A DNA stretch of 64,000 nt from Stegostoma tigrinum (Eukaryota): assembly GCF_030684315.1 (NCBI RefSeq), contig NC_081365.1:39206985-39270984 (forward strand), written 5' to 3'. The notes beneath the pieces were generated by a model. The model saw only the letters and a list, made by a program, of their open reading frames with translations, did not search any database and had not been told where the DNA came from. The position numbers were made by a program, and so were the translations under genes. How positions within the stretch are numbered: position 1 is the stretch's first letter; every line of letters starts with the position of its first letter. Shown one piece after another: positions 4,870 to 55,147 of the stretch.

Positions 4870-5016
4870 AAAGTTGGACTCTCTTAAGTTATCATTTTGT
4901 CTTATTCTGAATTAATGTGAATGGTGCCATGTATATATGGTGAACGTACACACTTGTCACTGTATTTTTACACTGAATACATGTGACAATAAACCATTAC
5001 ATCCAATTCAATTCAA
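4870..5016 (+). mobile_element. Probable 3' end of a non-LTR retroelement (Rex1/RTE-type tail)
   Basis: ...cactgtattt...catgtgacAATAAA followed by a short (CAATT)n tail; family assignment from recollection of similar tails only. Confidence 0.45.
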
Positions 5017-5091
5017 TATCCATCCAAGATAATAAAATGTGAGGCTGGATGAACACAGCAGGCCAAGCAGCATCTCAGGAGCACAAAAGCT

Positions 5092-5119
5092 GACGTTTCG
5101 GGCCTAGACCCTTCATCAG
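5092..5119 (-). ncRNA. Minimal hammerhead ribozyme core (PLE)
   Basis: Reverse complement CTGATGA-a-GGGTCTAGGCCC-GAAA-CGTC. Confidence 0.75.
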
Positions 5120-5825
5120 AGAGGGGGATGGGGGGAGGAACTGGAATAAATAGGGAGAGAGGGGGAGGCGGACCGAAGATGGAGAGTAAAGAAGATAGGT
5201 GGAGAGGGTGTAGGTGGGGAGGTAGGGAGGGGATAGGTCAGTCCAGAGAAGACGGACAGGTCAAGGAGGTGGGATGAGGTTAGTAGGTAGCTGGGGGTGC
5301 GGCTTGGGGTGGGAGGAAGGGATGGGTGAGAGGAAGAACCGGTTAGGGAGGCAGAGACAGGTTGGACTGGTTTTGGGATGCAGTGGGTGGGGGGGAAGAG
5401 CTGGGCTGGTTGTGTGGTGCAGTGGGGGGAGGGGATGAACTGGGCTGGTTTAGGGATGCAGTGGGGGACTCCCCTTCCCCCACTGCATCCCTAAACCAGC
5501 CCAGTTCATCCCCTCCCCCCACTGCACCACACAACCAGCCCAGCTCTTCCCCCCCACCCACTGCATCCCAAAACCAGTCCAACCTGTCTCTGCCTCCCTA
5601 ACCGGTTCTTCCTCTCACCCATCCCTTCCTCCCACCCCAAGCCGCACCCCCAGCTACCTACTAACCTCATCCCACCTCCTTGACCTGTCCGTCTTCTCTG
5701 GACTGACCTATCCCCTCCCTACCTCCCCACCTACACCCTCTCCACCTATCTTCTTTACTCTCCATCTTCGGTCCGCCTCCCCCTCTCTCCCTATTTATTC
5801 CAGTTCCCTCCCCCCATCCCCCTCT

Positions 5826-5853
5826 CTGATGAAGGGTCTAGGCCCGAAACGTC
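5826..5853 (+). ncRNA. Minimal hammerhead ribozyme core (PLE)
   Basis: CTGATGA-a-stem II GGGT/GCCC-GAAA-CGTC; palindromic ACGT in place of helix III. Confidence 0.75.
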
Positions 5854-5952
5854 AGCTTTTGTGCTCCTGAGATGCTGCTTGGCCTGCTGTGTTCATCCAG
5901 CCTCATATTTTATTATCTTGGAATCTCCAGCATCTGCAGTTCCCATTATCTC

Positions 5953-6380
5953 CAATATCCATCCAGCTGCCTTTTAAATATTGTAATTGTATGAGCCTTC
6001 AACACTTCCTCTGGTTGCTCATTCTATATACAACCATCCTCTGTGTGAAAAAGTTGCCCCTCAGGTTCCTTTTAAATATTTCTCCTCTTACCATAAACCT
6101 ATGCCCTCTAAGTTTGGACTACCCTTCAGGGGAAAAAACTTTGCTATTCACCCTTTCCATTCCCCCTCATGTTATTAACCTCTATGGTCACCTGTCAGCC
6201 TCTGAAGCTCCAGGGAAAGTAGCCCCAGCTATTCAGCATCTCCCTGTAGCTCAAATCCTCCAATCCTGGCAACATCTCTGTAGATCTTTCCTGAACTTGT
6301 TCAAATTTAACATCTTTCCTATTGCAAGGAGATCAGATTTGAACACAGTATCCTAAAAGTGGCCTCACCAGTACCCTGTG
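5953..6380 (-). mobile_element. CR1 LINE 3' fragment
   Basis: Reverse-complement similarity to the CR1 3' regions at 7700-8120 and 10731-11230. Confidence 0.8.
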
Positions 6381-13212: not shown

Positions 13213-13748
13213 TAATTTTTTTATTCAACATCACCCAATTGCTTGATGTTGAATAAAAAAAATTTACGTATGCAGTTTTTTCAAAATCTTCACTTGTAAA
13301 AATGCAGCATTCAGAAATTTGTCATTTGACAAGATACGTGATCAGTAGATGCCTAAAACTTATTCAATATTGTAAAAAAAATGCTTACACTTACAGATGT
13401 GCATAATGTATAAGGTAGTAAGTAGCTGAAAGGACTAATTGACATAACAAGATAAATTCCTCAGACTAGGACAAAGGACCATTCTTTGGAGGAGCTAACC
13501 AGCGTAATACTTACTGGTTGTTGTTCCAGTGTTAAATTTTGTGCAGCTAAACAGTAAGGTGTGTTTACTCTTAATTCTCACCTGAGTTCCGGCAACGGAC
13601 TATCATAATTAATACAGAAAGTGCTAGAGAAACCGAGCAGGTCTGGCAGCATTTATGGAACTGCAAACAGGGTTAACATTTGGAGTCTACAAAATGTGAG
13701 GCTGGATGAACACAGCAGGCCAAGCAGCATCTCAGGAGCACAAAAGCT

Positions 13749-13776
13749 GACGTTTCGGGCCTAGACCCTTCATCAG
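13749..13776 (-). ncRNA. Minimal hammerhead ribozyme core (PLE)
   Basis: Intact CTGATGA...GAAACGTC on minus strand. Confidence 0.75.
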
Positions 13777-15768
13777 AGGGATGGGGTGAGGGTTCTGGAA
13801 TAAATAGGGAGAGAGGGGGAGGCGGACCGAAGATGGAGAGAAAAGAAGATGGGTGGAGAGAGTATAGGTGGGGAGGTAGGGAGGGGATAGGTCAGTCCAG
13901 GGAAGACGGACAGGTCAAGGAGGTGGGATGAGGTTAGTAGGTAGATGGGGGTGCGGCTTGGGGTGGGAGGAAGGGATGGGTGAGAGGAAGAACAGGTTGG
14001 ACTGGTTTTGGGATGCAGTGGGTGGAGTGGAAGAGCTGGGCTGGTTGTGTGGTGCAGTAGGGGGAGGGGGCAAACTGGGCTGGTTTAGGGATGCAGTAGG
14101 GGAAGGGGAGATTTTGAAACAGGTGAAGTCCACATTGATACCATTAGGCTGCAGGGTTCCCAGGCGGAATATGAGTTGCTGTTCCTGCAACCTTCGGGTG
14201 GCATCATTGTGGCACTGCAGGAGGCCCATAATGGACATGTCATCTAAAGAATGGGAGGGGGAGTGGAAATGGTTTGCGACTGGGAGGTGCAGTAGTTTGT
14301 TGCGAACTGAGCGGAGGTGTTCTGCAAAGCGGTCTCCAAGCCTCCGCTTGGTTTCCCCAATGTAGAGGAAGCCACACCCGTTACAGTGGATGCAGTATAC
14401 CACATTGGCAGATGTGCAGGTGAACCTCTGCTTAATGTGGAATGTTATCTTGGGGCCTGGGATGGGGGTGAGGGAGGAGGTGTGGGGACAAGTGTAGCAT
14501 TTCCTGCGGTTGCAGGGGAAGGTGCCGGGTGTGGTGGGGTTGGAGGGCAGTGTGGAGCAAACAAGGGAGTCACGGAGAGAGTGGTCTCTCCGGAAAGCAG
14601 ACAGGGGGTGGGGATGGAAAAATGTCTTGGGTGGTGGGGTCGGATTGTAGACATTTCACTCCCGCACACCCCAGATGTCCAAATTCTTCAAGGACCGCAA
14701 CTTTCCCCCCACAGTGATCGAGAACGCCCTCGACCGCGTCTCCCATATTTCCCGCAACACGTCCCTCACACCCCGCCCCCGCCACAACCGCCCAAAGAGG
14801 ATCCCCCTCGTTCTCACACACCACCCCACCAACTTCCGGATACAACGCATCATCCTCAGACACTTCGGCCATCTACAATCTGACCCCACCACCCAAGACA
14901 TTTTTCCATCCCTACCCCTGTCTGCTTTCCGGAGAGACCACTCTCTCCGTGACTCCCTTGTTCGCTCCACACTGCCCTCCAACCCCACCACACTCGGCAC
15001 CTTCCCCTGCAACCGTAGGAAATGCTACACTTGCCCCCACACCTCCCCCCTCACCCCCATCCCAGGCCCCAAGATGACATTCCACACTAAGCAGAGGTTC
15101 ACCTGCACATCTGCCAATGTGGTATACTGCATCCACTGTACCCGGTGTGGCTTCCTCTACATTGGGGAAACCAAGCGGAGGCTTGGACACCGCTTTGCAG
15201 AACACCTCCGTTCAGTTCGCAACAAACTACTGCAGCTCCCAGTCGCAAACCATTTCCACTCCCCCTCCCATTCTTTAGATGACATGTCCATTATGGGCCT
15301 CCTGCAGTGCCACAATGATGCCACCCGAAGGTTGCAGGAACAGCAACTCATATTCCGCCTGGGAACCCTGCAGCCTAATGGTATCAATGTGGACTTCACC
15401 AGTTTCAAAATCTCCCCTTCCCCAACTGCATCCCTAAACCAGCCCAGTTCGTCCCCTCCCCCCACTGCACCACACAACCAGCCCAGCTCTTCCACTCCAC
15501 CCGCTGCATCCCAAAACCAGTCCAACCTGTCTCCGCCTCCCTAACCTGTTCTTCCTCTCACCCATCCCTTCCTCCCACCCCAAGCCGCACCCCCATCTAC
15601 CTACTAACCTCATCCCACCTCCTTGACCTGTCCGTCTTCCCTGGACTGACCTATCCCCTCCCTACCTCCCCACCTATACTCTCTCCACCCATCTTCTTTT
15701 CTCTCCATCTTCGGTCCGCCTCCCCCTCTCTCCCTATTTATTCCAGAACCCTCACCCCATCCCCCACT

Positions 15769-15796
15769 CTGATGAAGGGTCTAGGCCCGAAACGTC
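15769..15796 (+). ncRNA. Minimal hammerhead ribozyme core (PLE)
   Basis: CTGATGAAGGGTCTAGGCCCGAAACGTC. Confidence 0.75.
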
Positions 15797-17682
15797 AGCT
15801 TTTGTGCTCCTGAGATGCTGCTTGGCCTGCTGTGTTCATCCAGCCTCACATTTTGTTGTCTTGGATTCTCCAGCATCTGCAGTTCCCATTATCTCTAACA
15901 TTTTGAGTCTGATATGACTGGATGTTCTGAAGGACAAAGCTCCAAAGACGAGTCATATCAAACTCAACATGTTAGCAGTGTTTCTCTCTCCACAGATGCT
16001 GCCAGACTTAACTGAGTTTCTTCAGCACTTTCCACTTGTATTTCAGGACGCCAACACTGCAGGACATTGCTTTCATCAGATGTAGTGCAACTACCTCTTG
16101 CATACCATGTATTAAATCCCTTCTGTTAAACAAGACCAAGCCCATCTTCTGCTGAAGACTTTATGTGGTCTTCCTTTTATGCTTGGTGTCAGTAACTTAG
16201 ACCAATACCAGTAAGAAGGACTGGTGGCAGTGAATCAGCCACGTGGTTTCAATGATCACAACCAAAACACATGCCAGATAAAATAATTAACTAATGTAAA
16301 ACAGCATTGACATATGGAAAAGAAAATAAGCAAAATACATACTTGCTCTTAATGGTGACAGAGGTTTAAACTGCTCTTAGTTTTGTAAGACATACTGTAT
16401 CATGAACCAGCAGATAGGAAATGTATTTAAAGAAACAGCACATGAATCATTAAAGAACAGCTGATTTCTTTTTCCTTCAGTCCTATTTTCTTACAGCAAA
16501 ATTGATCTCGGATATTTGTTTTGTCTTTAAATTTATTTTTCTCACTAAATCTGGACTTGCTGTTTTTGGATCTAACAATTAATTGTTGTCTAACTGTTAA
16601 CTATTTATTTGACATTAAAACAAAAGCCTAATACAAACTCCTTAACCTCCCAAATAATTTTTTGTTTTGCATTCGATTGATCAAAGGAGCTGATGTAATT
16701 GCATGGAACATAATAGGAAGGGGGTATTATCAATTTCACTGATAATCCAAGTAAATGTCTCAACTACTGACTGAGAGGCACTGGGATCTCGCTCCTCTAA
16801 AACCCATGCCAATTTTACTTCACTCATATTGCTGCTTTTCCCTGTCATGCTTGAGGCTGTCCCTCTGAGTGACCCAAACAAATCTCTTTTACAAAGGTGA
16901 TGTCCACTACCAGGCCCGATCGAATACTGAGGTACATGTTGCATATCTGAGAGGAACAACTTGATATTCTTAATTGCCTTGTGGATCTTATCCCATCAGT
17001 GCTGGACAGTTCCCTGATTTAACATTCACACTACCACTAGCTATAGCTCTTGTCTGGCTAGCCAAGTTGTTGGCAAAATCCTTTGTCCATTAAAAATATG
17101 CATAAATATAGAGACAGTAAAATGTTTAATCATTCAGTAAATGAAACATTAATTGTAAACAACCTAACCAACCATACATAACACAATTTCCTATGGAATG
17201 GGGACCCAGATCTGGCTTCTCCAAACCTGTACACACCATCAAGCCTGGAAAGCAACAGCGTTCTTTCTATCTAAATAAAGAAAACTGTGTGACTTCTTTA
17301 TATCATGCTCTTCTATAGTTTCTTTTTTCCCGCAGAAGGCAACTGAAGTTTTACTACCACCTAAGAGTTCAAATTGATTGCTAAAGTGAGATCAGAGGCC
17401 TGGGGCTTTCCAAGCCAAACTTGTATTTCAGTTCACAAGCTGTAACTTTGTGGGCAATAGACTTTGATGCTCTAATCCTGCTGCAATAAAAATCCAAACA
17501 GTATTATAAACACTTTCATGTTTCACCTTCTTTCAACTCCACATATCTCCACTTACTTTATTTGTGTGAACCTACCTTTATAATATACTGCAACATCCCT
17601 GTTCTTGAAAGTGATCCTCTATAACATTACTAGTGCTACTGAAGACATAACCTTTGAAAATATAATTCATATCTATTCTAAT

Positions 17683-17907
17683 TAAAAACTGAAAGAACTC
17701 CGGATGCTGTAAATCAGGAACAAGAACAAAATTGCTGGAAAAGCCCATTGGGTCTTGCAGCATCTGTGAAGGAAAAAAACAGTTAACGTTTTGGGTCCAG
17801 TGACCTGGTTCTGAGGAAGGATCACTGAACCCAAAACGTTAATTCTGTTTTTTCCTTCACAGATGCTGCCAGACCTATCAGGTTTTTCCAGCAACTTTGT
17901 CTTTGTT
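17683..17907. mobile_element. Miniature PLE fold-back (older family)
   Basis: Inverted arms centred near 17805, decayed hammerhead ctgaggaaggatcactgaacccaaaacgtt; TSD core tatctattct at 17670-17679 and 17910-17919. Confidence 0.8.
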
Positions 17908-18595
17908 GGTATCTATTCTGTCTATGTTTTATTTCTAATGAAGTCAAACGAGTACAGCAAAGACATATCAACAATAACTATCAAGAAATACTCAACACAT
18001 TGAGATTGCTTTCTCAGAAAAGGAAAAACTAAAGGCGCTGAAGTGAGATCTTTAAGATTCTGTGGGGGTTGATAGGACAGAGTAGATGTTTCCACTAACA
18101 GGATAATAAACTTGTTTGCTGAATGGTTTGAAAGTTGAATATTCGATCTCGTGAAGTACTTGAGATGAATAGTACAGATGCTATTAAATGGAAGCTAACT
18201 AAATTCACAATGTAGAGAACAACAGAAGGATATCCTGATCAATGTAGATGAAACAAGATGAGAGGAGATTCATGTGGAACCTAAAATCTAGCATAGACCA
18301 GATGGGCTGAATGATTTGTGTTTGTGAAATAAATTCAACTCTCAAAATAACAAATATTTTGCAAAATCTGCTGTTACAAAGCCAAACAAACTGAATTTCA
18401 AATCCTGGAAAAATTAAGCAAAGGAAAAATATGCTAAAGTACACAGCATAATAATCAGTTTCCATGAGACTTTAATAACAGACAGAAAACAATCCCTGTA
18501 AATTTTATGTAACAAATTTAGAATTACTGTATTGGTTTCTTAAAATGACATCCATGAGATCACTAAAACATCTGCAAGCTGGTTAAATTTCCATA

Positions 18596-19336
18596 ACAAA
18601 AGAACTGAAAGAACTGTGGATGCTAGAAATCAGAAACAAAAACTGAAATTGCCAAAAAAAGACAGCAGGCCTGGCAGCATCTATGGAGAGAAATCCGAAT
18701 TAATGTTTCGAGTCCAGTGATCCTTCTTCAGAACTAATGGTAGCGAGGAGAAGTTTGATTTTCATGCAGAAGATAGAGTGGGATGAGGGAGGAGAAATGA
18801 ATGATAGGTGGAGGTAGAGCCCAAAGAGAGAGGAAGAACTGTTGGACTGTCAAAGAAATAGATAGGGGTCAATTTGGGAGAATGAATAACTGCTGATGGA
18901 AATTATTAGTGGCTGATAATGGATTGTATGTGGCAGCAGCCTATGTGATGACAAGGCATGGCGTGTGGGGATGGGGAAAGCATGGGGGAAAGTACTCAAG
19001 CCCTGAAATTGTTGAACTTGAAGTGAAATCTAGAGAAATGAGGTGCAGTTCTTACAGCTTGCGCTGAGCTTCTCTGGAATAGCTGAGACAGACATGTTGG
19101 CCAGGGAATAGGGTGATGTGTTGAAATGGCAGGCAACTGGAAGCTATGGGTCCTTTTGTGGACCGAACTCTGTCTGCACTTTGTTTCTCCAATGTAGAGG
19201 AGACCACACTATGAGCAGTGAATACTGTAGACTGGATTAAATGTGCTTCACGTGGAAGGTGTATTTGGAACCTTGGATAGTGAGGAGGAAGGAAGTAAAT
19301 GGGCAGGTGTTAAACCTTCTGCTATTGCGGGGAAGG
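18596..19336 (-). mobile_element. Older PLE 3' portion with GIY-YIG remnant
   Basis: ttgtttctccaatgtagagg = LYIGET on minus; terminus like 17683 and 34697. Confidence 0.78.
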
Positions 19337-19796
19337 GTTAAATTTCCATGGATGTTTTCCCAATCATAAATGTAATTCTCCTTGATTGAAATAATTATGG
19401 TGGACAATTGCGAGAACTCTATGATGTAACTGGCAAATAAATGTACCAGCAAGCGGGACTAGTAAAAACATCCATTTACAAATAGTTCTGTCCAATTTAT
19501 TCATCTCATTTAGTATAATCTGATTTTACCTGCTAGTCTGAATGAAAGCTAATTTGCCTCAACAGCGTAACCCTGTATAATTGAGTCATAAGGTTGAGCG
19601 ACTTTATTTATTGTGAACATGCTAAAGATTAAAATTTGGAAAAATCAGTAACTTAATTGGGTCAAACTGGTACCGTGTGTTGTGCCTTAAACAATAATTT
19701 CAAATTATTATAGCAAAGGTGGACGGAGTGGATGGATTGAACAACCTTGGCTTGGAACAATGAGCTTATGTTCATCAAGTATTGAAAGTACAGAAT

Positions 19797-19848: not shown

Positions 19849-19943
19849 TTTGTGCTCCTGAGATGCTGCTTGGCCTGCTGTGTTCATCCAGCTTCACACT
19901 TTATTATCTTGGATTCTCCAGCATCTGCAGTTCCCATTATCTC
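19849..19943 (+). mobile_element. PLE extreme 3' terminal fragment (~95 bp)
   Basis: Near-identical to 15801-15895. Confidence 0.88.
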
Positions 19944-21082: not shown

Positions 21083-21530
21083 CCTCTTGGGGACCCTGCA
21101 GCCTTCTGGTCTGATATTGAGTGCAATAATTTTAGGCCCAGAGCACCTTCTCCCATGTCCTTACCCCAACCCTTGTATGTAGGCTTGTCATTCATTTGGG
21201 CTGCCACCACAAGCAACCCATTGTCAGCCAAAAATAGTCACTAATAACAGCTATTCATTCTCCAAGGTTGATTTTTACCCTTTCCTTCATCTGTCAAACT
21301 GTTTTTCTCTGTCTCTGATCGCCATCTCCACCTATCATTTACTCCTTCCTCCACCTCCCACCTCTCCTCTAGCATATATATTGACTTTTTCCTAGCCACA
21401 ATCAGTTCTGAAGAAAGGTCACTGGACCTGAAACATTATCTCTTTGCAGATCTTGCCAGGCCTGCTGAGATTTTCCAACAATTTCTATTTTTATTTGATT
21501 TCCTGCGTGCACAGTTCTTTGGGTTTTTAT
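21083..21530 (+). mobile_element. Older PLE 3' fragment
   Basis: LGTLQP remnant, decayed hammerhead ctgaagaaaggtcactggacctgaaac; reverse-complement similarity to 18596-19060. Confidence 0.75.
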
Positions 21531-24008: not shown

Positions 24009-24536
24009 AGCGAGTTTGGAGAAGATTTGTAGCTCAGGTTGAGGTTCTGGATGTGAGTTTGCTCGCTGAGCTGGAAGGTTAGTTTTCTGACGTTTCGTCA
24101 CCATTCTAGGTAACATCATCAGTGAGCCTCCGACGAAGCGCAGGTGTTATGTCCCGCTTTCTATTTATCTGGTTAGGTTTCCTTGGGTTGGTGATGTCAT
24201 TTCCTGTTCTTTTTCTCAGGGGATGGTAGATTGGCTCCAAGTCAATGTGTTTGTTGATGGAATTCCGGTTGGAATGCCATGCTTCCAGGAATTCCTAGAA
24301 GCATGGCATTCCAACCGGAATTCCATCAACAAACACATTGACTTGGAGCCAATCTACCATCCACTGAGAAAAAGAACAGGAAATGACATCACCAACCCAA
24401 GGAAACCTAACCAGATAAATAGAAAGCGGGACATAACACCAGTGCTTCGTCGGAGGCTCACTGATGATGTTACCTAGAATGGTGACGAAACGTCTGAAAA
24501 CTAACCTTCCAGCTCAGCGAGCAAACTCACATCCAG
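24009..24536. mobile_element. Second-family (Penelope/Poseidon-type) PLE fold-back: 245 bp arms with no spacer
   Basis: Palindrome 24047-24536 centred in GGAA|TTCC (24291/24292), ~5 mismatches; encodes EFLEAWHSNRNSINKHIDLEPIY (GIY-YIG C-terminus); 12 bp TSD aggtatgaaact at 23997-24008 and 24535-24546. Confidence 0.9.
24461..24494 (+). ncRNA. Minimal hammerhead ribozyme core (mirror copy 24089-24122 on minus)
   Basis: tca-CTGATGA-t-GTTACC tagaat GGTGAC-GAAA-CGTC-tga: 6 bp helix II, 3 bp helix I. Confidence 0.8.
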
Positions 24537-25387: not shown

Positions 25388-25565
25388 GTGATAATGGGAA
25401 CTGCAGCTGCTGGAGAACCCGCCTCCCCCTCTGTCCCTATTTATTCCAGTTCCCTCTCCCCATCCCCCTCTCTGATGAAGGGTCTAGACCCGAAACGTCA
25501 GCTTTTGTGCTCCTGAGATGCTGTTTGGCCTGCTGTGTTCATCCAGCTCCACACTTTGTTATCTT
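25388..25565. mobile_element. Miniature PLE insertion with an inverted 30 nt terminus
   Basis: Inverted terminus 25388-25417, forward part with intact hammerhead 25472-25499; 14 bp TSD tca(a/g)tttgc(t/a)tggg at 25375-25388 and 25565-25578. Confidence 0.85.
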
Positions 25566-26184
25566 CAGTTTGCATGGGACTAGCATTCTGAATTCACCCC
25601 ATCTCATTCAGTTCTGCTTGAAGCTCCCCCTGCATGTGCACATTATACTTCTTTCTGGAATTAATGCACATTGTTGCATTGTCTTTGAGATGCAATACTA
25701 CATTACTTTTAAAATTGCTGATCTTGTTCAAGTGATTTGGGCACAGTTATTGAGATTTTTGATTGGTGGCCAGTTCTACCACAGTGATCTGAATCTCATG
25801 AATTGTGACTATACAGATGTCTGTGAATACTGGTAATCTTGTTACTGTTGGACAATTGGTATCTGCCAGATAGATGATTTAAGGAAACCAAGATGAGCTT
25901 GTGTATTAGCACTGCACTGTGGTTCTGCCAATGCAAGGAATCAGTGATCATTTAGAGCAGCTTTCTTATAGGTTATGTCAGGGAGCACCATTTGCTGATC
26001 TACATGTCCTTCAGGATGCATAGTGGTAATATGTTGGCTCTCACTCTATTATTGATAGTGCTTTTATGGTTTGTCATTCTTCCTTTTCAGAACATATAAT
26101 GCTAAAGATTTTAAAGCTGATCACAACAACAATGTTGGCTGCACCATAAGCATATAATTATGGTGGGCTTGCCGTTATGGTTCC

Positions 26185-30233: not shown

Positions 30234-31566
30234 AATACACCTCCTCCCACCCACCCTCCTGCAAAAATTCCATCCCCTATTCCCAATTCCTCCGCCGCAT
30301 CTGCTCCCACGATGAGGCATTCCACTCCCGCACATCCCAGATGTCCAAGTTCTTCAAGGACCGCAACTTTTCCCCCACAGTGGTCGAGAACGCCTTTGAC
30401 CGTGTCTCCCGCATTTCCCGCAACACATCCCTCACACCCTGCCCCCGCCACAACCGCCCACAGAGGATCCCCCTCGTTCTCACACACCACCCCACCAACC
30501 TCCGGATACAACGCATCATCCTCCGACACTTCCGCCATCTACAATCTGACCCCACCACCCAAGACATTTTTCCATCCCCACCCCTGTCTGCTTTCCGGAG
30601 AGACCACTCTCTCCGTGACTCCTTTGTTCGCTCAACACTGCCCTCCAACCCCACCACACCTGGCACCTTCCCCTGCAACCGCAGGAAATGCTACACTTGC
30701 CCCCACACCTCCTCCCTCACCCCTATCCCAGGCCCCAAGATAACATTCCACATTAAGCAGAGGTTCACCTGCACATCTGCCAATGTGGTATACTGCATCC
30801 ACTGTACCCGGTGCGGCTTCCTCTACATTGGGGAAACCATGCGGAGGCTTGGGGTCCGCTTTGCAGAACACCTCCGCTCAGTTCGCAACAAACAACTGCA
30901 CCTCCCAGTCGCAAACCATTTCCACTCCCCCTCCCATTCTTTAGATGACATGTCCATCATGGGCCTCCTGCACTGCCACAATGATGCCACCCGAAGGTTG
31001 CAGGAACAGCAACTCATATTCCGCTTGGGAACCCTGCAGCCCAATGGTATCAATGTGGACTTCACCAGTTTCAAAATCTCCCCTTCCCCTACTGCATCCC
31101 AAAACCAGCCCAGTTCTTTCCCTCCCCCCACTGCACCACACAACCAGCCCAGCTCTTCCCCTCCACCCACTGCATCCCAAAACCAGTCCAACCTGTCTCT
31201 GCCTCCCCAACCTGTTCTTCCTCTCACCCATCCCTTTCTCCCACTCCAAGCCGCACCTCCATCTCCTACCTACTAACCTCATCCCACCTCCTTGACCTGT
31301 CCATCTTCCCTGGACTGACCTATCCCCTCCCTACCTCCCCACCTATACTCTCCTCTCCACCTATCTTCTTTTCTCTCCATCTTCGGTCTGCCTCCCCCTC
31401 TCTCCCTATTTATTCCAGAACCGTCACCCCATCCCCTTCTCTGATGAAGGGTCTAGGCCCGAAACGTTAGCTTTTGTGCTCCTGAGATGCTGCTGGGCCT
31501 GCTGTGTTCATCCAGCCTCACATTTCGTTATCTTGGATTCTCCAGCATCTGCAGTTCCCATTATCA
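30234..31566 (+). mobile_element. Penelope-like (Neptune-type) 5'-truncated copy, no inverted arm
   Basis: ORF 30341-31276 with Cys linker and GIY-YIG; hammerhead core 31441-31468; terminus gcagttcccattatc. Confidence 0.93.
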
Positions 31567-34696: not shown

Positions 34697-37600
34697 TAAA
34701 AAACTTAAGAACTGCAGATGCTGTAAATCAGGATCAAAAACAGAAATTGCTGGAAAAGCTCAGCAGGTCAGGCAGCATCTGTGAAGAAGAACCCTTCCAC
34801 AGAACTGATGATTACTAGGAAAATGTCAGTTTGTATGCAGATGATATGGTGGGGTAAAGGGGTATGGAGTAAATGATAGATGGGGATAGAGCCCAAAGAC
34901 CCACAGCAATGTGGTTGACTCTCACCTGCCCTCTGAAATGGCCCAGCAAGCCACTCAATTGTACCAATTGCTAAAAAGACTGAAAGAAATGAAACTGGCA
35001 GGTCACACGGCATCGACCTAGGCACTGGAAAAGTCAGGGGCAGAAACAGCCCTGTCAGCCGTGCAAAGTCATCCTTGCTAACATCTGGGGGTCAGTGTCG
35101 AAATTGGAAGAGCTGTCTCACAGACGAGTCAAGCAACAGCCTGGCATAGTTATACTCACAGAATCATACCTTACAAACGATGTCCCAGCCACCACCCGCA
35201 CCATCCCTGGATATGTCCTGTCTCACCGGCAGGACCGATCCAGCAGAGGAGACAGCACAATGGTATACAGTTAGGAGGGAGTTGCTCTGGGAGTCCTCAA
35301 CACTGACTCTGGATCCCATGAAGTCTCGTGGCAAAGACACCTCCTGCTGATTACCACATACCGTCCTCCCTCAGCTGATGAGTCAGTACTCCTCAATATT
35401 AAACAACACTTAGAGGAAGCGCTGAGGATGGCAAGCCACAAAATGTACTCTGGGTGGGGGATTTCAATGTCCACCACCAAGAGTGGCACGGCAGCAGTAC
35501 GACTGATTTGAACTGGTCGAGTCCTACAGGACATAGCTGCTAGACTGGGTCTGCGATAGGTGGTGGGGGAACCGACAAGAGGGAAGAACATACTTGACCT
35601 CATCCTGACTAATCCACCAGCTGCAGTTGCATCTGCCCATGGCAGTATGGGTAAGGGTGACCTTCGCATGGTCCTTGTGGAGACGAAGTCCCACCTTCAA
35701 ATTGAGAACAACCTCCATCGTGGCACTATCACCATGTTAAATAGGACAGAGTTTGCACAGATCTAGCAACTCAACACTGGGCATCCATGAGGCACTGTGG
35801 GCCACTAACAGCAGCGAATTGTACTCCAGCACAATCTGTAACCTCATGGCCCGGCATATCCCCCACTCAACCATTACCATCAAGCCAGGGATCAACCCTG
35901 GTTCAATAGAGAGTGCAGGAGGGCATGCCAGGAGCAGCACCAGTCATACCTGAAGATGAGGCATCAACCTGGTGAAGCCACCAGATAGGACTACTTGCAC
36001 GCCAAACAGCAAAAGAAGCAAGTGATAGACAGAGCTAAGTGATCCTACAACCAGCAGATCAGATCTAAGCTCTGCAGTCCTGCCACACCAGTCACAAATG
36101 GTGCTGGACAATTAAACAGTTCACTGGAGGAGGAGACTCCACAAATATCCCATCCTCAATGATGGAAGAGCCCAGCATATCAGTGCAAAAGATAAGGCTG
36201 AAGCATTCACAGCAACCTTCAGCCAAAAGTGCCGAGTAGATCCATCTCGGCCTCCTCCAGTGGTCCCCAGCATAAAGGTTAGCAGTCTTCAGCCAATTCG
36301 ATTCACTCCATGTGATATCAAGAAATGGTTGGAGACACTGGTCAGTGCAAAGGCTATGGGCCTTGACAACATTCCGACAGTAGCACTGAAGACGTGTGCT
36401 CTAGAACTTGCTGCTCCCCTAGGCATGCTATTCCAGCACAGTAACAACACTGGTATCTACCTGACAATGTGGAAAATTGCCCAAGTATATCCCGTACACA
36501 AAAAAGCAGGACAAATCCAACCTGGCCAATTACTGCCCCAAGAGTCTCCTCTCGATCATCAGTAAAGTGATGGAAGGTGTCAACAACAGTCCTATCAAGC
36601 AGCACCTGCTCAGTGACGCCCAGTTTGGATTCCACCAGGGCCACTCAGTTCCTGATCTCATTACAGCCTTGGTTCAAACACGGACAAAAGAGCTGAATTC
36701 CAGAGGTAAGGTGAGAGTGACATCCCTTGATATCAAGGCTGCATTCAACCGAGTGTGGCATCAAGGAGCCCTAGCAAAACTGGAATCAATGGGTATCAGG
36801 GGGCAAACTCTCCGGTGGTTGGAGTCATACCTGACGCATAGGAAGATGGTCGTGGTTGTGGGAGGTCAATCATCACAGTTCCAGGACATCTCTGCAGCAG
36901 TTTCTCAGGGTAGTGTCTGAGGCCCAACCATCTTCAGCTGCTTCATCAATGACCTTCCCTCTATCATAAGGTCAGAAGTGGGGATGTTCGCCGATGATGT
37001 TCAGCACCATTTGCAACTCCTCAGATATTGAAGCAGTCCATGTTCACATGCTACAAGATCTGGACAATATCTAGGCTTGGGCTGACAAGTGGCAAGTGAC
37101 ATTTGTGCCACACAAATGCCAGGCTATGACCATCACCAATAAGAAACAATCTAACCACCACCCCTTGGCGTTCAATGGTGTTACCATCACTGAATTCCCC
37201 ACTGTCAACATTTTGGGGGTTACCATTTACCAGAAACTCAACTGAACTCACCACATTAACCCACAAGAGCAGGCCTGTCCACCATCTACAAGGCACAAAT
37301 CAGGAGTGTGATGGAATACTCCCCACTTGTCTGGACGAGTGCAGCCCCAAAAACACTCAAGAAGCTTGACAACATCCAGGAAAAAGCAGCCCACTTGATG
37401 GGCACTACATCCACAAGCATTCACTCCCTCCACCACTGATGCTCAGTAACAGCAGTGTGTACTATCTACAAGATACACTGCAGAAATTCACCAAAAATCC
37501 TCGGACAGCACCTTCCAAACCCACAACCACTTGCATCTAGAAGGACAAGGGCATCAGACATATGGGAACACCACCTCCTCCAAGTCCTCCTCCAAGCCAC

Positions 37601-48112: not shown

Positions 48113-48890
48113 TTATATTTCATTGACAATATCTGGATGATTCTCGATATATATCTGGTGGTAATACTTCATATGCTCATTTGGAGAAACTTTAGGAACA
48201 AAAATTACATTAACCTGAAATCAGTGATTAATTCCTGTTTGTATTTGAATGTATGAAACAAACACTAAATACCAAAATGATGTAAGTGATATTATGATTT
48301 GAATTTTTTTTTTCTTTTTAATTAGGATTTCTTCGAGGATTACAGATTGAATTCACAGGTAACTGGCATTTTTAAAAAAGTGGCAGTTCCTTTTTGTGAT
48401 ATTTAGCCAAATGTCAAAATAGAATTGCCTGAAGTATATGGACAGATGCCTTGCTGTTACAATTTAAAAGTTGACACTGCAAAGTCTACCTTATTAACAT
48501 CTGGCCACTAGTGTCAAATTTTGAAAAGATATCTTATAGCCTAGTCAAGCTGCATCCTGGCACAGTTATGGCCACAGAATCATCTCTTGCACACAATCTC
48601 CTAAGTATTGCCATTGCTATTCCTGGGCATGTCCAGACCATTCCACAGAACGGATCCAGAGCATAGTGGCACACAGTTAGAAAGAAGCTGTACTGGGAGA
48701 CTTCAGCGCTGACTCCTGACTTCATGAACTGTCATAGCATCAGGTGAAACCTGAGCAAAGAAACTTTCTGCTGATGATCGCAGACCAACCACATCCACCT
48801 CTCCCCTCAGCTGATAAATCAGTTTTCCTCCATGTTGAACACCACTTGGAGGAACCACTGAAGAAATAAAAGGAACAGAATGTAATCTGG

Positions 48891-50957
48891 GATAATGGGA
48901 ACTGCAGATGCTGGAGAATCCAAGATAACAAAATGTGGACCTGGATGAACACAGCAGGCTAAGCAGCATCTCAGGAGCACAGAAGCTGATGTTTTGGGTC
49001 TAGACCCTTCAGAGAGGGTGATGGGGAGATGGCCCCACCGAACCTATCTCCACCTATCTGGACTCCATTTTCTCCCCTTTGGTCCAGGAACTCCCCACCT
49101 ATGTCTGTGACACCACCCACGCCCTCCACCTCCTCCAGGACTTCCAATTCCCTGGCCCCCAACACCTCATTTTCACCATGGACGTCCATTCCCTATACAC
49201 CTGTATTCCTCATGCAGATGGCCTCAAGGCCCTCCGCTTCTTACTGTCCCGCAGGCCCGACCAATCCCCCTCCACCGACACCCTCATCCGCCTAGCCGAA
49301 CTTGTCCCCACCCTCAAGAAATTCTCTTTCGATTCCTCCCACTTCCTACAGACAAAGGGGGTGGCCATGGGTCCCCGCATGGGCCCAGGCTATGCCTGCC
49401 TCTTTGTAGGTTACGTGGAACAGTCCCTCTTCCGCACCTACACAGGCCCCACACCCCATCTCTTCCTCCGTTACATTGATGATTGTATCGGCGCCGCCTC
49501 TTGCTCCCCAGAGGAGCTCGAACAGTTCATCCACTTTACCAACACCTTCCACCCCAACCTCAAGTTCACTTGGGCCATCTCCAACACATCCCTCACCTTC
49601 CTGGACCTCTCAGTCTCCATCTCAGGTAACCAGCTAGAAACTGATGTCCATTTCAAGCCCACTGACTCCCACAGCTACCTAGAATACACCTCCTCCCACC
49701 CACCCTCCTGTAAAAATTCCATCCCCTATTCCCAATTCCTCCGCCTTCGCCACATCTGCTCCCAGGATGAGGCATTCCACTCCCGCACATCCCAGATGTC
49801 CACGTTCTTCCAGGACCGCAACTTTCCCCCCGCAGTAGTCAAGAACGCCCTTGACCACGTCTCCCGCATTTCCCACAACACATCCCTCACACACCGCCCC
49901 CAGAGGATCCCCCTCGTCCTCACATACCACCCCACCAACCTCCGGATACAACGTATCATCTTCCGTCACTTCCGCCATCTACAATCCAACCCCACCACCC
50001 AAGCCATTTTTCCATCCCCACCCTTGACTGCCTTCCGGAGAGACCACTCTCTCCGCGACTCCCTTGTCCACTCCACACTCCCCTCCAACCCCACCACACC
50101 CGGCACCTTCCTCTGCAACCGCAGGAAGTGCTACACTTGCCCCCACACCTCCTCCCTTACCCCTATCCCAGGCCCCAGGATGATCTTCCATATCAAACAG
50201 TTGTTCACCTGCACATCTGCCAATGTGGTATACTGTATCCATTGTATCCGGTGTGGCTTCCTCTACATTGGGGAAACCAAGCGGAGGCTTGGGGACCGCC
50301 TTGCAGAACACTTCCGCTCGGTTCGCAACAAACAACTGCACCTCCCAGTCGCGAACCATTTCCACTCCCCCTCCCATTCCTCAGACGACAGACGACATGT
50401 CCATCATGGGCCTCCTGTGGTGCCACAATGATGCCACCCGAAGGTTGCAGGAACAGCAACTCATGTTCCACTTGGGAACCCTGCAGCCCAATGGTATCAA
50501 TGTGGACTTCACAAGCTTCAAAATCTCCCCTTCCCCTACTGCATCCCAAAACCAGCCCAGTTCTTTCCCTCCACCTACTGCATGACAAAACCAGCCCAGC
50601 TCGTCCCCTCCCCCCACTGCATCCCAAAACCAGCCCAGCCTGTCTCTGCTTCCCTAACCTGTTCTTCCTCTCACCTATCCCTTCCTCCCACCTCAAGCCG
50701 CACCTCCATTTCCTACCTACCACCTCATCCCGCCTCCTTGACCTGTCCCCTCCCTACCTTCCTGCCTATACTCACCTCTCTACCCATCTTGTTTTCTCTC
50801 CATCTTCGGTTCGCCTCCCCCTCTCTCCCTATTTATTCCAGTTCCCTTTCCCCATCCCTCTCTCTGATGAAGGGTCTCGGCCCGAAACGTCAGCTTTTGT
50901 ACTCCTGAGATGCTGCTTGGCCTGCTGTGTTCATCCAGCTCCACACTTTGTTATCTT
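48891..50957. mobile_element. Penelope-like (Neptune-type) insertion: short inverted full-terminus arm 48891-49028 plus long forward copy 49030-50957
   Basis: Perfect 15 bp TSD agaatgtaatctggg at 48877-48891 and 50958-50972; hammerhead core 50864-50891. Confidence 0.95.
49079..50431 (+). pseudogene. PLE reverse transcriptase + GIY-YIG ORF, 5'-truncated and frameshifted near the C-terminus
   Basis: TMDVHSLYT (A), QTKGVAMG (B), LRYIDD (C), FLDL, CNRRKCYTC, VVYCI...LYIGET; 7 bp duplication agacgac near 50383-50396 shifts the frame. Confidence 0.92.
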
Positions 50958-52011
50958 AGAATGTAATCTGGGTTTGGTCCTCAATGCGCCACACCAAAAG
51001 TGGCTGGGTAGCCGCATTACTGACCGAGCTGGTCATGTCCAAAAAGGTCATAGCTGCTGGACAGGTCCTGCAGGAACTGATGAGGGAACTAACAGGAGGG
51101 AAAATTATACTTACCATGGTCTCACTATGCAAAGCAGAAAAGATGTGTCTGTCCATGATCATTTCAGTATGAGTGACCACTGCACAGAGCTGGAGGAGAC
51201 GCGGTGCTATCTTCACATTAATGATAATTATCATTATGTTATGGGGTACTTCTAACATATTGAATGGGATAAGTTTCAGACAGGTCTGACAACTCATGTA
51301 TGTGCATGCTTGAGGAATTAAGGATCATCATCAACAGCGTAATTATACTTAACCATAATCCGTAACATCATGGTTCCACTACTAACACTAAGCCAAGGAA
51401 TCAACTGCGAGCCAATGCATAATGCAGATGGTCATGCCAGCAGCAGCAGCATTAAAACGGATCAGATCTAAGCTCTGCAATCATGTCACATTCAGTCATG
51501 AATGGTAATTGACAACTAAATAACCCATTTTGTGGAGGAGGTTCTGTAGGTATTCTCATTCTCAATACATCAGCACAAAAGACGAGGCAGAAGCATTCCT
51601 AAGCATCTTCAGCCAAGCAGATGATTCACTTCAGATTCCTTGGAAGGTCCTTTGCATCACAGCTGCTAATCTTCAATGAATTTGATTCAGTCAACATGAT
51701 GAAGAAACAGCTGAAGACATTAAGTATCACATAGGATACGGCCCTGACAACATTTGGCAGCAGTACTGAAGAAATGTGCTCCAGAAGTTGCCTTGCAAAG
51801 CTGTCCCAGTACAACTACATCACTAGTATTTAACTGACAATTTGGAAACTTAGCCAGGTATTTGTGGTCGCATACACTGAAAAAAGGACAAGTCTAATCC
51901 AACCAATTACCAGCCCATCAGTCTACTCTCGATCATGAGTAAAGTGATGGAAGGTGTCATCAACAGTGCTATCAAGCAGCAGTTAACAAAAACCTGCTCA
52001 CTGACTCTTAT

Positions 52012-52187
52012 TAACAAAGTGTGGAGCTGGATGAACACAGCAGGCCAAGCAGCATCTTAGGAGCACAAAAGCTGACGCTTCGGGTCTAGTCCCTTCATCA
52101 GTTTTTCTGCTGCTTGGCCTGCTGTGTTCATCCAGCTCCACATTTTGTTATCTTGGATTCTCCAGCATCTGCAGTCCCCATTATCTC
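52012..52187. mobile_element. Miniature PLE fold-back
   Basis: 12 bp TSD ctgactcttatt at 52001-52012 and 52187-52198; inverted arms. Confidence 0.88.
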
Positions 52188-54425
52188 TGACTCTTATTTT
52201 CAGCTCTTTCAGACACATTCTGCTTTTGACCTCATTACAGTCTTGGTTCAAACATGGACCAAAGAGATGAACTCCAGGTATGAAGCGAGACTGACTGTCC
52301 ATGGCTGTCAAGACCACATTTGAATGAGTGCAGCATCATGGAGCTCTAGCAAAGCTGGGACATTGAGGATCAGGAGGAAAACTGTCCACTGTTTGTATTT
52401 TTAGCTGGCAAAGGACAGTGGTTGTGATTGTTGGAAGTCAGTCATCTTACTCCCAGGACATCATTGCAGGAGTTCATCAGGGTAGTGTCCTGAGCCCAAC
52501 CATCTTCAGGTGCATCATCAATAACCTTCCCTCATTATAAAGTCAGAAGTGGGGATGCTCGCTGATGATTTCACAAAGCAAGTCTAACCATCATCCATTG
52601 ACATTCAATGGCATTACCATTACCAAATCCCCCACTATCAAAGTCCTGGGGGTTAATGTTGTCCTGAAACTTAACAGGACCAGCCATTTACATACTGTAG
52701 TTACAAGTGTATGTCTGAGACTGGAAATTCTGGTGAATAACTTATCTCTTGACTCCCAAAGATCTTCCTGCCATCTAAAATGCACACATCAGGAGTGTTA
52801 TGGAATATTCTCAACTTGCGTGGGTGAATTCAGCTTCAACAACACTCAAGAAGCTCAAACTTATACAGGATACAGCAGCCCACTGATTGGCATCCCTTCT
52901 AAAACCTTCAACATTTCCTTCCTCTACCACTGACATATAATGGCAGCAGTGTGTATCATCTGCAAGACAGCTTGCAACAAATTAACCAAGGCTCCTTCAA
53001 TGAGCTATACTATTTAGAATCATGAAGACAGCAGATAATTGGAAACAAAACCACCTGCAAGTTCCCCTTCAAGACACACACGACACTGACTTGGAGAATT
53101 ATCACCATTCCTTCATTGTCACTTGGTCAAAATCCTGCAACTTGCTCCTTAAGAGCAATATGGGCATCTTGACATAGACTGCAGCAGAACAAGAAGACTG
53201 CTCAACACCAATTTCTCATAGGCAATTAGGGATGGGCACTAAATGCTGGACTAATGAATGCTTGAAAAGGAACATGTTGAAACTTTACATCAGAATTTAC
53301 AGATTGATCATGCGAACAAGCTAAACTTGAGCTACGTTTGGTCAGTTTGTGGAAAAAACTGAGGCACAGCTGATTAGTACAAATGGTATTTTGCACATAG
53401 GCTGTGGTTCACTTATCACACATAATGACAAATTACTTTGAAATCTTTTCTTCCAGGGTGTTTGAGAGAATATATTCTGATTGATACCAATGTACGTTAG
53501 TGAAAATGACTGACAGGGCGTTGATGATTCCTATAGTACTGACGACATACATCCCAAAAAAAATATAAAATCAAAGCAAGGTACTGGGGATCTGAAAAAA
53601 GTATCATGTGTCAGAAAAACTAAGCTGGTCTGATTTTGTATTGGTAGACAGCGGAACAGGATTAACATGTCAAGTTCAATATGACTGTTCTTTGAAAGGT
53701 CACAGAAACCGGCTTAGTTGAGCACCAGAAGATCATAAACCTGAGTTATGTCTTTAAACCACACACCGTTATTTTGGGGATAATGTTTAAGTCTGAGCCT
53801 CTGAAATATGATCCCAATAGTTACATGAAAGATTCTGCTGGAAAGTAGTTACTAAAGCAGATCTCAGCATATATAAGGGCTGCACAATCTCTGTGTAATT
53901 ATTGTTAATAAATACTATTTGAAGGAACAACTGGAAGTCTGGCCTGAGATTATTTGAAAAGCAGATGGATCCACACTAAAACATCTCTGAAGCACTTTGA
54001 ACGTTTTATACCTCAGAGGCATGATATAAATGCAAACTTCAAATATAAATGTGTGCTGCTGTCACACTTTAGTCACACCCTATAATTCAACAGCACATTG
54101 CATTTAGAATAGAAAAATGACACTGAGCCAAAGAAAGGCTTTACAATGGTTGACAAAAACTTGAGGAAAAGAGGTGGGTTTTATGGAGTGCCTTAAAGAA
54201 TGGAAGGAAGACAGGAGGGATCTAGGAAGAAATTCCAGAGCACAGTGCGGCTGAAGGGAAGTTACCAATACTGGTGAGAAGTGAGGACCTATAAAGCAGG
54301 TAAACATTATGGAGCTAGGAAGAATCTTGGCTACAAAGAGATTTAAAATCAAAAATTGAATTTGAAACACACCAGGATGATATAGGTAATGAGATAAAGC
54401 ATTTTTAGGAATTTGTGTAGGATAC

Positions 54426-54641
54426 AGAGATAGTAGGAACTGCAGATGCTGAAAAATCTGAGATAACAAGGTATACAGCTGGATGAATACAGCTGGCCAA
54501 GCAGCATTAGAGGAGCAGGAAGGCTGACGTTTCAGGCCTAGATCCTTCTTCAGAAGGGTCCAGGCCTGAAATGTCAGCCTTCCTGCTCCTCTGGTGCTGC
54601 TTGGCCTGCTGTGTTCATCCACCTCTACACCTTTTTATCTC
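54426..54641. mobile_element. Miniature PLE fold-back (related older subfamily)
   Basis: ~90 bp inverted arms meeting at the hammerhead (~54550); degraded TSD core tgtgtag at 54414 and 54642. Confidence 0.82.
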
Positions 54642-55147
54642 TGTGTAGAGTGCTTTGTATGAGTTGAAGAGGATTGATGGTGAAGAATTAGAAGTAGGCT
54701 AGGATCACATTGTTCAACATGAAGTTGCATAGGCAAAATGTAGATCAGATGAGTAGTGGTGGTTAAGGAAGTGAAATGAATTAATCTTTGTGATGGATGT
54801 TCCTTAATGTGTAATTTGATACTAATGTATGGATAATTTTCTAATTACAGAATCACTGAAACAGACCTGGGGAGAAGCTGAAAAGTCCTGGATCAGTCCT
54901 ATTCTTGCTTGTCCACAATGAATGCAAAAGAACAATTTCCCTCAAGAAGCTGACAGGTCCAGCATCTGGTCAAGCTGCTAGGCATCTCCAAGGTCAAGTT
55001 GTCCCTCACATATTATTAAATGTCAGTAGCTTCTGCCTTTGATATGTTAACTAAACCCCCCTACCTCTCTTCTGGAGATCACTTTTCCATGTAGTAATTT
55101 ATGGGCCTTTAAGATTTAGACATGTGAAAAAAAAAGGCAGGAATATC

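What the first reader, a model, noticed from the sequence alone, without database searches (positions are those of the whole stretch)
5014..54648. Recurring rule in Penelope-like insertions: fold-back arms, 10-15 bp TSDs, second arm always 30-39 nt short of the 3' terminus
Seen: eight insertions from at least three PLE families share one architecture (5023-5952, 13689-15895, 17683-17907, 24009-24536, 25388-25565, 48891-50957, 52012-52187, 54426-54641). Both 3' ends face outward between direct repeats. One arm has the full terminus; the other lacks about 30, 39, 35, 38, 31, 31, 36 and 33 nt respectively. The full-terminus arm can be the long arm (13689) or the short arm (48891, 25388). Some truncated arms share 1-4 nt with the TSD (tcca at 5023-5026; ag at 24535-24536). 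Known: inverted pseudo-LTRs and a ~35 nt 3' tail are described for Drosophila Penelope. Inference: both nicked target strands prime reverse transcription, one at the RNA end and one ~35 nt internally via microhomology, so the same region is copied twice, unlike non-overlapping L1 twin priming. The offset appears conserved across divergent families, which would point to a fixed RNP footprint.
Basis: partly seen in the sequence, partly recalled or inferred. Interest (0 to 1): 0.8.

Follow-up and report, generated by a model that had tools for sequence, protein, structure and literature searches.

The report
Shark Penelope insertions with one-sided tail
Eight jumping-gene insertions in this shark DNA are each built as two head-to-head copies inside one target duplication, with a roughly 35-base end piece on only one copy; the pattern is real, but it is the published hallmark of Penelope-like elements and fits 2024 test-tube results, so it is mostly ordinary.

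Summary
All eight loci are inverted head-to-head pairs of 5'-truncated Penelope-like element (PLE) copies with their 3' ends facing outward. Six sit inside highly significant 10-15 bp target-site duplications; two have decayed ones. In each pair one arm ends at the full terminus and the other stops 30-39 nt short.

A census of the window found no pair with two tails or none, plus a probable ninth, older pair. Six single-arm copies all carry the tail. Contigs from a public run of the same species end on the element at three places only, 34 and 38 nt before the terminus and 1 nt past it. A related species appears to lack the youngest insertion.

This is the known PLE architecture: a 30-40 bp "tail" at one end of an inverted pair (Arkhipova 2013; Craig 2021). 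Frangieh et al. 2024 showed in vitro that a PLE protein cuts and extends both strands and starts reverse transcription at two adjacent internal sites that bracket the tail, without target homology.

So the two-strand, offset-priming idea is right but published. "At the RNA end" and "via microhomology" are not supported. The possible additions are strict one-tail-per-pair coupling, one pair whose arms abut without overlap, and a conserved helix inside the tail. The scan has noted the same architecture elsewhere in this genome.

The parts
5023..5952 (.). Fold-back 1 (family A). Tail-less antisense arm 5023-5468; sense arm 5469-5952 with tail 5923-5952; TSD 5014-5026 / 5953-5965.
13689..15895 (.). 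Fold-back 2 (family A). Tail-less antisense arm 13689-14651; sense arm 14652-15895 with tail 15857-15895; TSD 13674-13688 / 15896-15910. It is nested in an older C-like fold-back.
17683..17907 (.). Fold-back 3 (family C). Tail 17683-17718; centre at about 17813, at the start of the hammerhead box; TSD 17670-17679 / 17910-17919.
24009..24536 (.). Fold-back 4 (family D). Tail 24009-24046; perfect zero-loop palindrome centred at 24291/24292; TSD 23997-24008 / 24535-24546.
25388..25565 (.). Fold-back 5 (family A). The antisense arm is only the tail (25388 to about 25418). The sense arm 25419-25565 ends 31 nt short of the terminus. The arms abut in element coordinates. Decayed TSD 25375-25388 / 25565-25578.
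48891..50957 (.). Fold-back 6 (subfamily of A). Tailed antisense arm 48891-49027; tail-less sense arm 49028-50957 carrying the ORF 49079-50431 (YIDD motif, CCHH zinc finger, GIY-YIG); TSD 48877-48891 / 50958-50972.
52012..52187 (.). Fold-back 7 (family A). Tail-less antisense arm 52012-52101, ending at the start of the hammerhead box; 6-nt filler; tailed sense arm 52108-52187; TSD 52001-52012 / 52187-52198.
54426..54641 (.). Fold-back 8 (family E, about 80% identical to A). Tail 54426-54459; centre at about 54550, at the hammerhead box; decayed TSD 54414-54421 / 54642-54649.
13611..16073 (.). Probable ninth, older C-like fold-back, split by fold-back 2. Tail-less antisense arm 13611-13688 plus 15896 to about 15925; sense arm from about 15940 to about 16073, with roughly 32 nt of tail-like sequence. 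No clear TSD.
19849..19943 (+). Single-arm family A copy with full tail; no convincing TSD.
30234..31565 (+). Single-arm family A copy (1.3 kb, endonuclease part of the ORF) with full tail; no convincing TSD.
21395..21530 (+). Single-arm family C copy with hammerhead core and tail.
18608..18738 (-). Single-arm family C copy with tail. The outer boundary at 18608 is also a genome-wide loose end.
34699..34792 (-). Single-arm family C copy with tail.
55148..55277 (-). Single-arm E-like copy with hammerhead core and tail.
58961..60344 (-). Decayed internal PLE fragment (reverse transcriptase region, residues 177-637 of a bamboo-shark PLE protein model). No terminus.

Best explanation
These are ordinary insertions of endonuclease-bearing Penelope-like elements of an orectolobiform (carpet) shark.

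Proposed mechanism:
- The element's GIY-YIG endonuclease nicks both target strands 10-15 bp apart.
- Each freed 3' end then primes reverse transcription of element RNA. One starts at a precise distal site, giving the 'full terminus'. The other starts in a 9-nt window 30-39 nt upstream, giving the tail-less end.
- The two cDNAs are joined at their inner ends. The product is a head-to-head inverted pair inside one TSD, with the 30-39 nt tail on one side only.

Both start sites are most likely internal to a longer RNA and are set by how the protein holds a structured RNA segment, not by pairing with the target.

Shown here: the anatomy, the TSDs, the discrete offset, the strict one-tail-per-pair pattern in this window, and the PLE identity of family A.

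Shown elsewhere, in vitro for an anole PLE: both strands are cleaved and extended, and there are two adjacent start sites without target homology.

Inferred:
- In one event the two strands use different sites.
- Both primers sit on the same RNA molecule, with the distal-primed cDNA displacing the other one.
- Symmetric pairs arise when both cDNAs run to the same RNA 5' end.
For: PLE identity:
- The ORF 49079-50431 has the YIDD reverse-transcriptase motif, a CCHH zinc finger and GIY-YIG. GIY-YIG scores 19-21 bits in three copies, just under the Pfam cut-off.
- It matches 720 proteins at E<=1e-10. The best are whale-shark and zebra-shark models at 85-86% identity, and many hits carry RVT_1 and GIY-YIG domains.
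- Hammerhead cores sit about 95-125 nt from each outer end, as published for PLE repeats.

Architecture.

Census:
- 8 of 8 pairs are heterotypic, 9 of 9 with the older one; no pair has two tails or none.
- If each arm chose its site independently, the probability is at most 0.004.

Genome-wide:
- In the same-species run X15, contigs leave the family A arm at 15857 (647 contigs), 15861 (766) and 15896 (1317). The C-family distal end 17683 has 1502.
- X15 contigs cross the junctions 13688/9, 17682/3 and 17907/8 with 0-1 mismatches.
- A contig of a related species (about 6% diverged) aligns over 13400-13688, stops exactly at the insertion boundary, and has 20 further letters that do not fit. The same species does carry the older 17683 insertion.

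Against a single-cDNA snap-back: the tail is on the short arm in 25388, 48891 and 52012.

For one shared RNA: in 25388 the tailed arm is 30-33 nt long and stops where its partner begins, at -31.

Literature.
Against: - Only eight or nine events were examined, and all come from one 64-kb window.
- The genome-wide table lists only the best-supported loose ends, and it counts contigs, not copies. Tail-less ends (1413 contigs) are about as frequent as tailed ends (1317), so tail-less single copies may exist elsewhere and the strict rule may not hold genome-wide.
- The 15857 cluster may be inflated by a private base of the reference copy at 15858.
- In vitro, Frangieh et al. saw no difference in start-site use between the two strands. 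That gives no reason for strict coupling.
- Near-symmetric pairs away from any landmark (fold-back 1, where the arms differ by 6-7 nt) are explained more naturally by self-priming.
- The single-arm copies lack convincing TSDs.
- No full-length copy is in the window, so 'both sites are internal' rests on analogy and on open frames in stop-poor sequence.
Confidence: 0.8

Rival explanations
1. A single target-primed cDNA folds back on itself (self-priming or a template switch to the nascent cDNA) and copies itself outward. The endonuclease then resolves the intermediate about 35 nt short of the end, which leaves the tail on one side. This follows the suggestions in Arkhipova 2013 and Craig 2021.
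For: - Fold-back 1 has arms whose inner ends differ by only 6-7 nt at an unremarkable position.
- Fold-back 2 has the tailed arm reaching 220 nt further in than its partner.
- Palindromes at inverted junctions have been read as self-priming.
Against: - The tailed arm would have to be the one that reaches furthest inward. In 25388, 48891 and 52012 it is the short arm (30-33, 137 and 80 nt against 147, 1930 and 90 nt), and a tail cannot be copied from a tail-less cDNA.
- Fold-back 4 is a zero-loop palindrome, which a hairpin cannot make directly.
- In vitro, both strands are extended from RNA.
Confidence: 0.1
2. Short fold-backs are non-autonomous hairpin elements that are transcribed and copied as whole units. 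On this view the tail-less end is inherited from a master copy and is not made at each insertion.
For: Many contigs genome-wide share one inner junction (13777/8 joined to 15767/8) in both the same species and a related one. Dual hammerheads on opposite strands 100-700 bp apart are common in other animals.
Against: - The eight pairs have different arm lengths and inner junctions: 446/484, 963/1244, 137/1930, 90/80 and about 31/147 nt.
- The tail-less end varies over 9 nt within family A.
- Arms within a pair are 96-100% alike where family copies differ by 5-13%.
- The shared junction is at the hammerhead box start, which also marks the inner ends of single arms (572 loose ends at 13777), as a run-off or stop site would.
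Confidence: 0.05
3. Each pair is two independent insertions, the second homing into the first, or is an assembly artefact of a palindrome.
For: PLE endonucleases recognise their own tail region. Palindromes are hard to assemble.
Against: - One TSD brackets each composite in at least six of eight cases, at scores never reached by random placement.
- Contigs of a separate run cross three outer junctions with 0-1 mismatches.
- Arms within a pair are near-identical.
Confidence: 0.03

Closest known systems
Endonuclease-positive Penelope-like elements (Penelope/Poseidon type), as described by Arkhipova et al. 2013, Craig et al. 2021 and Frangieh et al. 2024
   Same: [quoted passage not shown]
- A minimal hammerhead in the terminal repeat.
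- 5'-truncated copies joined head to head inside a short TSD.
- A 30-40 bp tail at one end only.
- The hammerhead cut site lies 25-26 nt after an ATG in the CUGAUGA box and about 95-125 nt before the insertion ends, the same geometry as the anole element PAc.
   Different: - These are shark families, with very high copy number in at least two related species.
- TSDs are longer (10-15 bp) than the 8-10 bp reported for rotifer copies.
- No direct pseudo-LTR or full-length copy is present in this window.
- In this window the tail is never on both arms or on neither, which is stricter than the 'optional' or 'often' wording of the papers.
L1 twin priming (inversion and 5' truncation of LINE-1 insertions)
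   Same: Both staggered 3' ends of the target prime on element RNA. This gives an inverted segment next to a direct one inside one TSD. Insertion 25388 has non-overlapping arms like an L1 inversion.
   Different: - The second start is confined to a 9-nt window 30-39 nt from the first. In L1 it can be anywhere on the RNA.
- It needs no target microhomology in half the cases.
- In seven of eight events the same RNA region is copied twice.
R2 / non-LTR target-primed reverse transcription
   Same: The nicked target serves as primer, and the copies are 5'-truncated.
   Different: In vitro, R2 and L1 extend only the bottom strand from the RNA 3' region. Here both ends carry RNA-templated arms.

Membership tests
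Penelope-like elements (EN+) | Single ORF with a PLE-type reverse transcriptase followed by a C-terminal GIY-YIG endonuclease | tested here: met
   Family A and its subfamily only. The ORF 49079-50431 has YIDD, CCHH and GIY-YIG, and the GIY-YIG hit recurs in the copies at 14675-15544 and 30341-31276. Strong matches to shark and invertebrate proteins with RVT_1 and GIY-YIG domains; tblastn placement. Families C, D and E have no coding part in the window.
Penelope-like elements (EN+) | Minimal type-I hammerhead motif in the terminal repeat | tested here: inconclusive
   The CUGAUGA...GAAAC-GUC core is present in every arm long enough to hold it, in all four families. It matches the published description of minimal PLE hammerheads. 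Rfam models give no hit at the gathering threshold or at E<=10. Cleavage was not tested.
Penelope-like elements (EN+) | Inverted 5'-truncated copy adjacent to the element, the whole unit flanked by a short TSD | tested here: met
   Eight cases; six have TSDs beyond any of 3000 random placements.
Penelope-like elements (EN+) | [quoted passage not shown] | tested here: met
   Offsets are 30-39 nt in all eight. Genome-wide loose ends lie 34 and 38 nt before the terminus and 1 nt past it.
Penelope-like elements (EN+) | Partial tandem arrangement giving direct pseudo-LTRs | tested here: inconclusive
   No internal copy of the tail motif and no direct repeat of the terminal region was found in any copy. 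All copies here are 5'-truncated, so the feature could not show.
L1-type twin priming | Second primer anneals at variable internal RNA positions through microhomology; the inverted and direct parts do not overlap | tested here: not met
   The second start is confined to 30-39 nt from the first. Microhomology is 0 nt in four of eight cases. Arms overlap in seven of eight.

The most novel reading that the evidence does not exclude
In living cells the two target strands never use the same start site in one event. That would mean both primers sit on one RNA molecule held by a dimeric element protein, one on each side of a conserved 7-8 bp helix strand inside the tail. The distal-primed enzyme then follows behind the proximal one and strips its cDNA off the RNA. 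On this reading, insertion 25388 (a tail-only arm abutting its partner) is the stalled form, and symmetric pairs are double run-offs at the RNA 5' end. This coupling is not stated in the papers I read, and the in vitro data showed no strand bias.
Probability: 0.3. Interest if true: 0.5.

Novelty: already known. Interest (0 to 1): 0.3.

Why it matters
PLE integration is the least understood of the major retrotransposon mechanisms, and the first in vitro system dates from 2024. These shark genomes hold very many young, TSD-bounded insertions from several families. They are a natural record of integration outcomes against which the in vitro two-site model can be checked. If the one-tail-per-pair rule holds genome-wide, it constrains the geometry of the integration complex: two active sites, one RNA, and a spacing of about 35 nt. 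As a description of architecture, the finding adds nothing to what is published.

Tried and rejected
- Rfam covariance models did not call the hammerheads at the gathering threshold or at E<=10. I relied on the core motif and the published description.
- tblastn of three longer homologous protein models found no N-terminal coding region in the window. Internal initiation could therefore not be shown directly.
- The idea that the two arms of 48891 came from different RNAs (87% identity, perfect 15-bp TSD) was dropped. Several of the differences are CpG decay, and a perfect AT-rich TSD at that divergence is not unlikely (about 0.14).
- Joints such as 15896->13691 and 15896->17683 looked like tail-to-tail arrangements. 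They have unknown letters between the sides and only about 33 nt on the shorter side, so they are most likely contigs bridging two separate insertions.
- A TATA-like box 33-34 nt before the hammerhead box in families A and C suggested a transcription start there. Family D does not share the spacing, so this stays a lead.
- RNA folding energies of the terminal 83-103 nt are not better than shuffles. Only the specific helix recurs.
- Alignment of families A, C and E shows no compensatory changes in that helix. Only family D gives an independent version.
- A bacterial promoter scan was uninformative.
- The bisulfite raw-read runs were not used, because converted reads would not align.
Full report
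**What is there**

The window is shark DNA. The best protein matches are whale-shark and zebra-shark models at 85-86% identity. It is rich in 5'-truncated copies of Penelope-like elements (PLEs).

Repeat finding and self-BLAST confirm that all eight listed loci are inverted repeats. Hammerhead cores (CTGANGA...GAAAC-GTC) sit on opposite strands in the two arms and read outward.

In the 2-kb copy at 48891-50957 the long arm carries a 450-codon ORF that also reads outward. It has a YIDD reverse-transcriptase motif, a CCHH zinc finger and a GIY-YIG endonuclease.

I see four sequence groups:
- A, with a subfamily at 48891.
- E (54426), about 80% identical to A.
- C (17683). Like A and E, its tail carries a motif close to CAGCATCTGCAGTTC.
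- D (24009), which is unrelated in sequence apart from the hammerhead core.

**Offsets and TSDs**

Aligning the outward 120 nt of the two arms gives missing lengths of 30, 39, 36, 38, 31-33, 31, 37 and 34 nt.

A scored search for flanking direct repeats found 13/13, 14/15, 10/10, 12/12, 15/15 and 12/12 matches for six insertions. All six score above every one of 3000 random placements. The two older insertions give 12/14 and 7/8, p about 0.03-0.05.

**Census**

Searching the window for the tail motif and for a body motif about 60 nt upstream accounts for every family A/E copy. There are six pairs, each with exactly one tail. The window also holds tailed single arms at 19849-19943, 30234-31565 and 55148-55277.

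A hammerhead-core scan adds family C single arms at 18608-18738, about 21395-21530 and 34699-34792, all tailed.

The 13689 element is itself inserted into an older C-like fold-back, 13611-13688 plus 15896 to about 16073. Its right arm appears to carry about 32 extra tail-like bases.

So 8 of 8 pairs (9 of 9 with the old one) have one tail, and none has two or zero. If each arm chose its start site independently, the probability is at most 0.004. The single arms have no convincing TSDs, so their status as complete events is open.

**Genome-wide and cross-species evidence**

I laid contigs of four public runs on 13400-19399. Family A is present at enormous depth in the same-species run X15 and in a related species, and at lower depth in a third.

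Among the best-supported loose ends in X15, contigs leave the tailed family A arm at only three places:
- 15857 (647 contigs)
- 15861 (766 contigs)
- 15896 (1317 contigs)

That is 38 and 34 nt before the terminus (15895), and 1 nt past it. This is a discrete distribution, not a uniform one. There are three caveats. Only the top rows are shown. Contigs are not copies. The 15857 peak may absorb ends up to 15862, because the reference copy has a private base at 15858.

X15 contigs cross the junctions 13688/9, 17682/3 and 17907/8 with 0-1 mismatches.

A 1107-nt contig of the related species (about 6% diverged) aligns over 13400-13688 and stops exactly at the insertion boundary, with 20 further letters that do not fit. 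This is what an empty site would give, but I could not read those 20 letters. The same species has the older 17683 insertion.

**Comparison with what is known**

- Arkhipova et al. [quoted passage not shown]
- Craig et al. [quoted passage not shown]
- Frangieh et al. 2024 (PMC11167929) purified an anole PLE protein. [quoted passage not shown]
- Cervera and de la Peña 2014 (PMC4209133) describe the minimal hammerheads, and note pairs of them on opposite strands 100-700 bp apart.

The shark elements share the anole geometry. An ATG lies in the CUGAUGA box, the cut site is 25 nt later, and the insertion ends are about 90-125 nt after the ATG.

No paper in the library links PLEs with the term 'twin priming' in a mechanistic sense.

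*Microhomology.* Bases shared between the tail-less arm and the TSD number 4, 0, 0, 2, 1, 0, 1 and 0. The sum of 8 against 2.7 expected gives a post hoc p of about 0.017. Half the junctions have none, so pairing may bias the choice within the window but is not required. This agrees with the in vitro result.

*'RNA end'.* In families A and C an ATG about 80 nt before the terminus opens a frame that stays open through the tail. In family D the frame from the ATG in the hammerhead box does the same. This is as in the anole and rotifer elements, where the tail lies in the first codons of the ORF. The evidence is weak, because the sequence has few possible stops and no full-length copy is in the window.

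*Precision.* The distal end is precise to within about 2 nt, while the proximal ends of family A spread over 9 nt.

**How it most likely works**

Two-strand priming explains all eight events. A single cDNA that snaps back explains only those in which the tailed arm reaches furthest inward. In 25388, 48891 and 52012 the tail is on the short arm, and it cannot have been copied from a tail-less cDNA.

Insertion 25388 is informative. Its tailed arm is only 30-33 nt long and stops where its partner begins, at -31. This is what is expected if both primers sat on one RNA and the distal enzyme ran into the other start point. If arm length were arbitrary, the chance of this is about 2%.

One shared RNA would also explain why no pair has two tails. 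The overlapping arms then require strand displacement; this step is inferred.

Inner junctions are direct, with 0-7 nt of filler. Several inner ends lie at the first base of the hammerhead box:
- fold-back 3
- fold-back 8
- the left arm of fold-back 7
- many genome-wide joints from 13777/8 to 15767/8
- 572 loose ends at 13777

Fold-back 4 is a zero-loop palindrome. Double run-off at a common RNA 5' end followed by end joining would give such symmetric pairs. Whether that 5' end is a transcription start is untested.

**An added observation**

In every family the longest perfect complement between the tail and the upstream sequence falls at the same place. The 5' strand lies 17-22 nt after the hammerhead cut, and the 3' strand lies in the middle of the tail. 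The 3' strand is 5-14 nt beyond the proximal site and 15-22 nt before the distal end.

The sequence is AGAUGCUG/CAGCAUCU in family A, with shortened forms of it in C (7 bp) and E (6 bp), and AGCUCAG/CUGAGCU in D. Shuffle p is 0.003-0.009 for A and D. The two start sites thus flank one strand of a conserved helix, which fits the stem-loop noted for the anole element. Within families A, C and E there is no covariation.

**Limits**

- The analysis rests on one window and contig-level genome-wide data.
- Earlier notes of this scan on other parts of the same genome describe the same architecture, and one follow-up reached the same verdict.

Noticed in passing
window 13777/15768, 17811-17813, 52101, 54550-54553, 18735: Inner (5') ends of arms pile up at the first base of the hammerhead CUGAUGA box, about 28 nt upstream of the predicted ribozyme cut. 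In-window cases are matched by many genome-wide joints and by 572 loose ends in the same-species run. A TATA-like box lies 33-34 nt upstream in families A and C but not D, so a transcription start there is possible but unproven.
   Followed up: partly
window 15813-15820 with 15871-15878 (family A); 24066-24072 with 24031-24037 on the minus strand (family D): A 7-8 bp helix pairs a segment just after the hammerhead cut site with the middle of the tail. It sits at the same relative position in all families and has a different sequence in family D. In families A, C and E the 5' strand contains the candidate start codon.
   Followed up: partly
window 13611-13688 and 15896-16073: Fold-back 2 is inserted inside an older C-like fold-back, so PLEs are nested within PLEs here.
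   Followed up: partly
window 58168-58629 (minus strand): An ORF with an immunoglobulin V-set domain (Pfam E = 5.5e-7) lies next to a decayed PLE fragment. It may be an exon of an Ig-superfamily gene.
   Followed up: no
window 1-4800: Extremely C/T-rich low-complexity sequence (GC skew near -1) with an N gap at 1771-2095. The long ORFs listed there gave no Pfam hit where tested and are probably spurious.
   Followed up: no
window 37991-38563 (minus strand): A divergent PLE endonuclease-region fragment, about 73% identical in DNA to family A. No terminus is present.
   Followed up: no
window 13600-16000, 17600-18000, 18600-18800: Families A and C are at very high contig depth in the same species and in a species about 6% diverged. 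Family A is also present in a third organism, so these families predate those splits or are still active in each lineage.
   Followed up: no
window 19849-19943, 30234-31565 and the four other single arms: Single-arm tailed copies lack convincing TSDs, although some are young (about 95% identical to family A). In contrast, the fold-backs have clean TSDs.
   Followed up: partly
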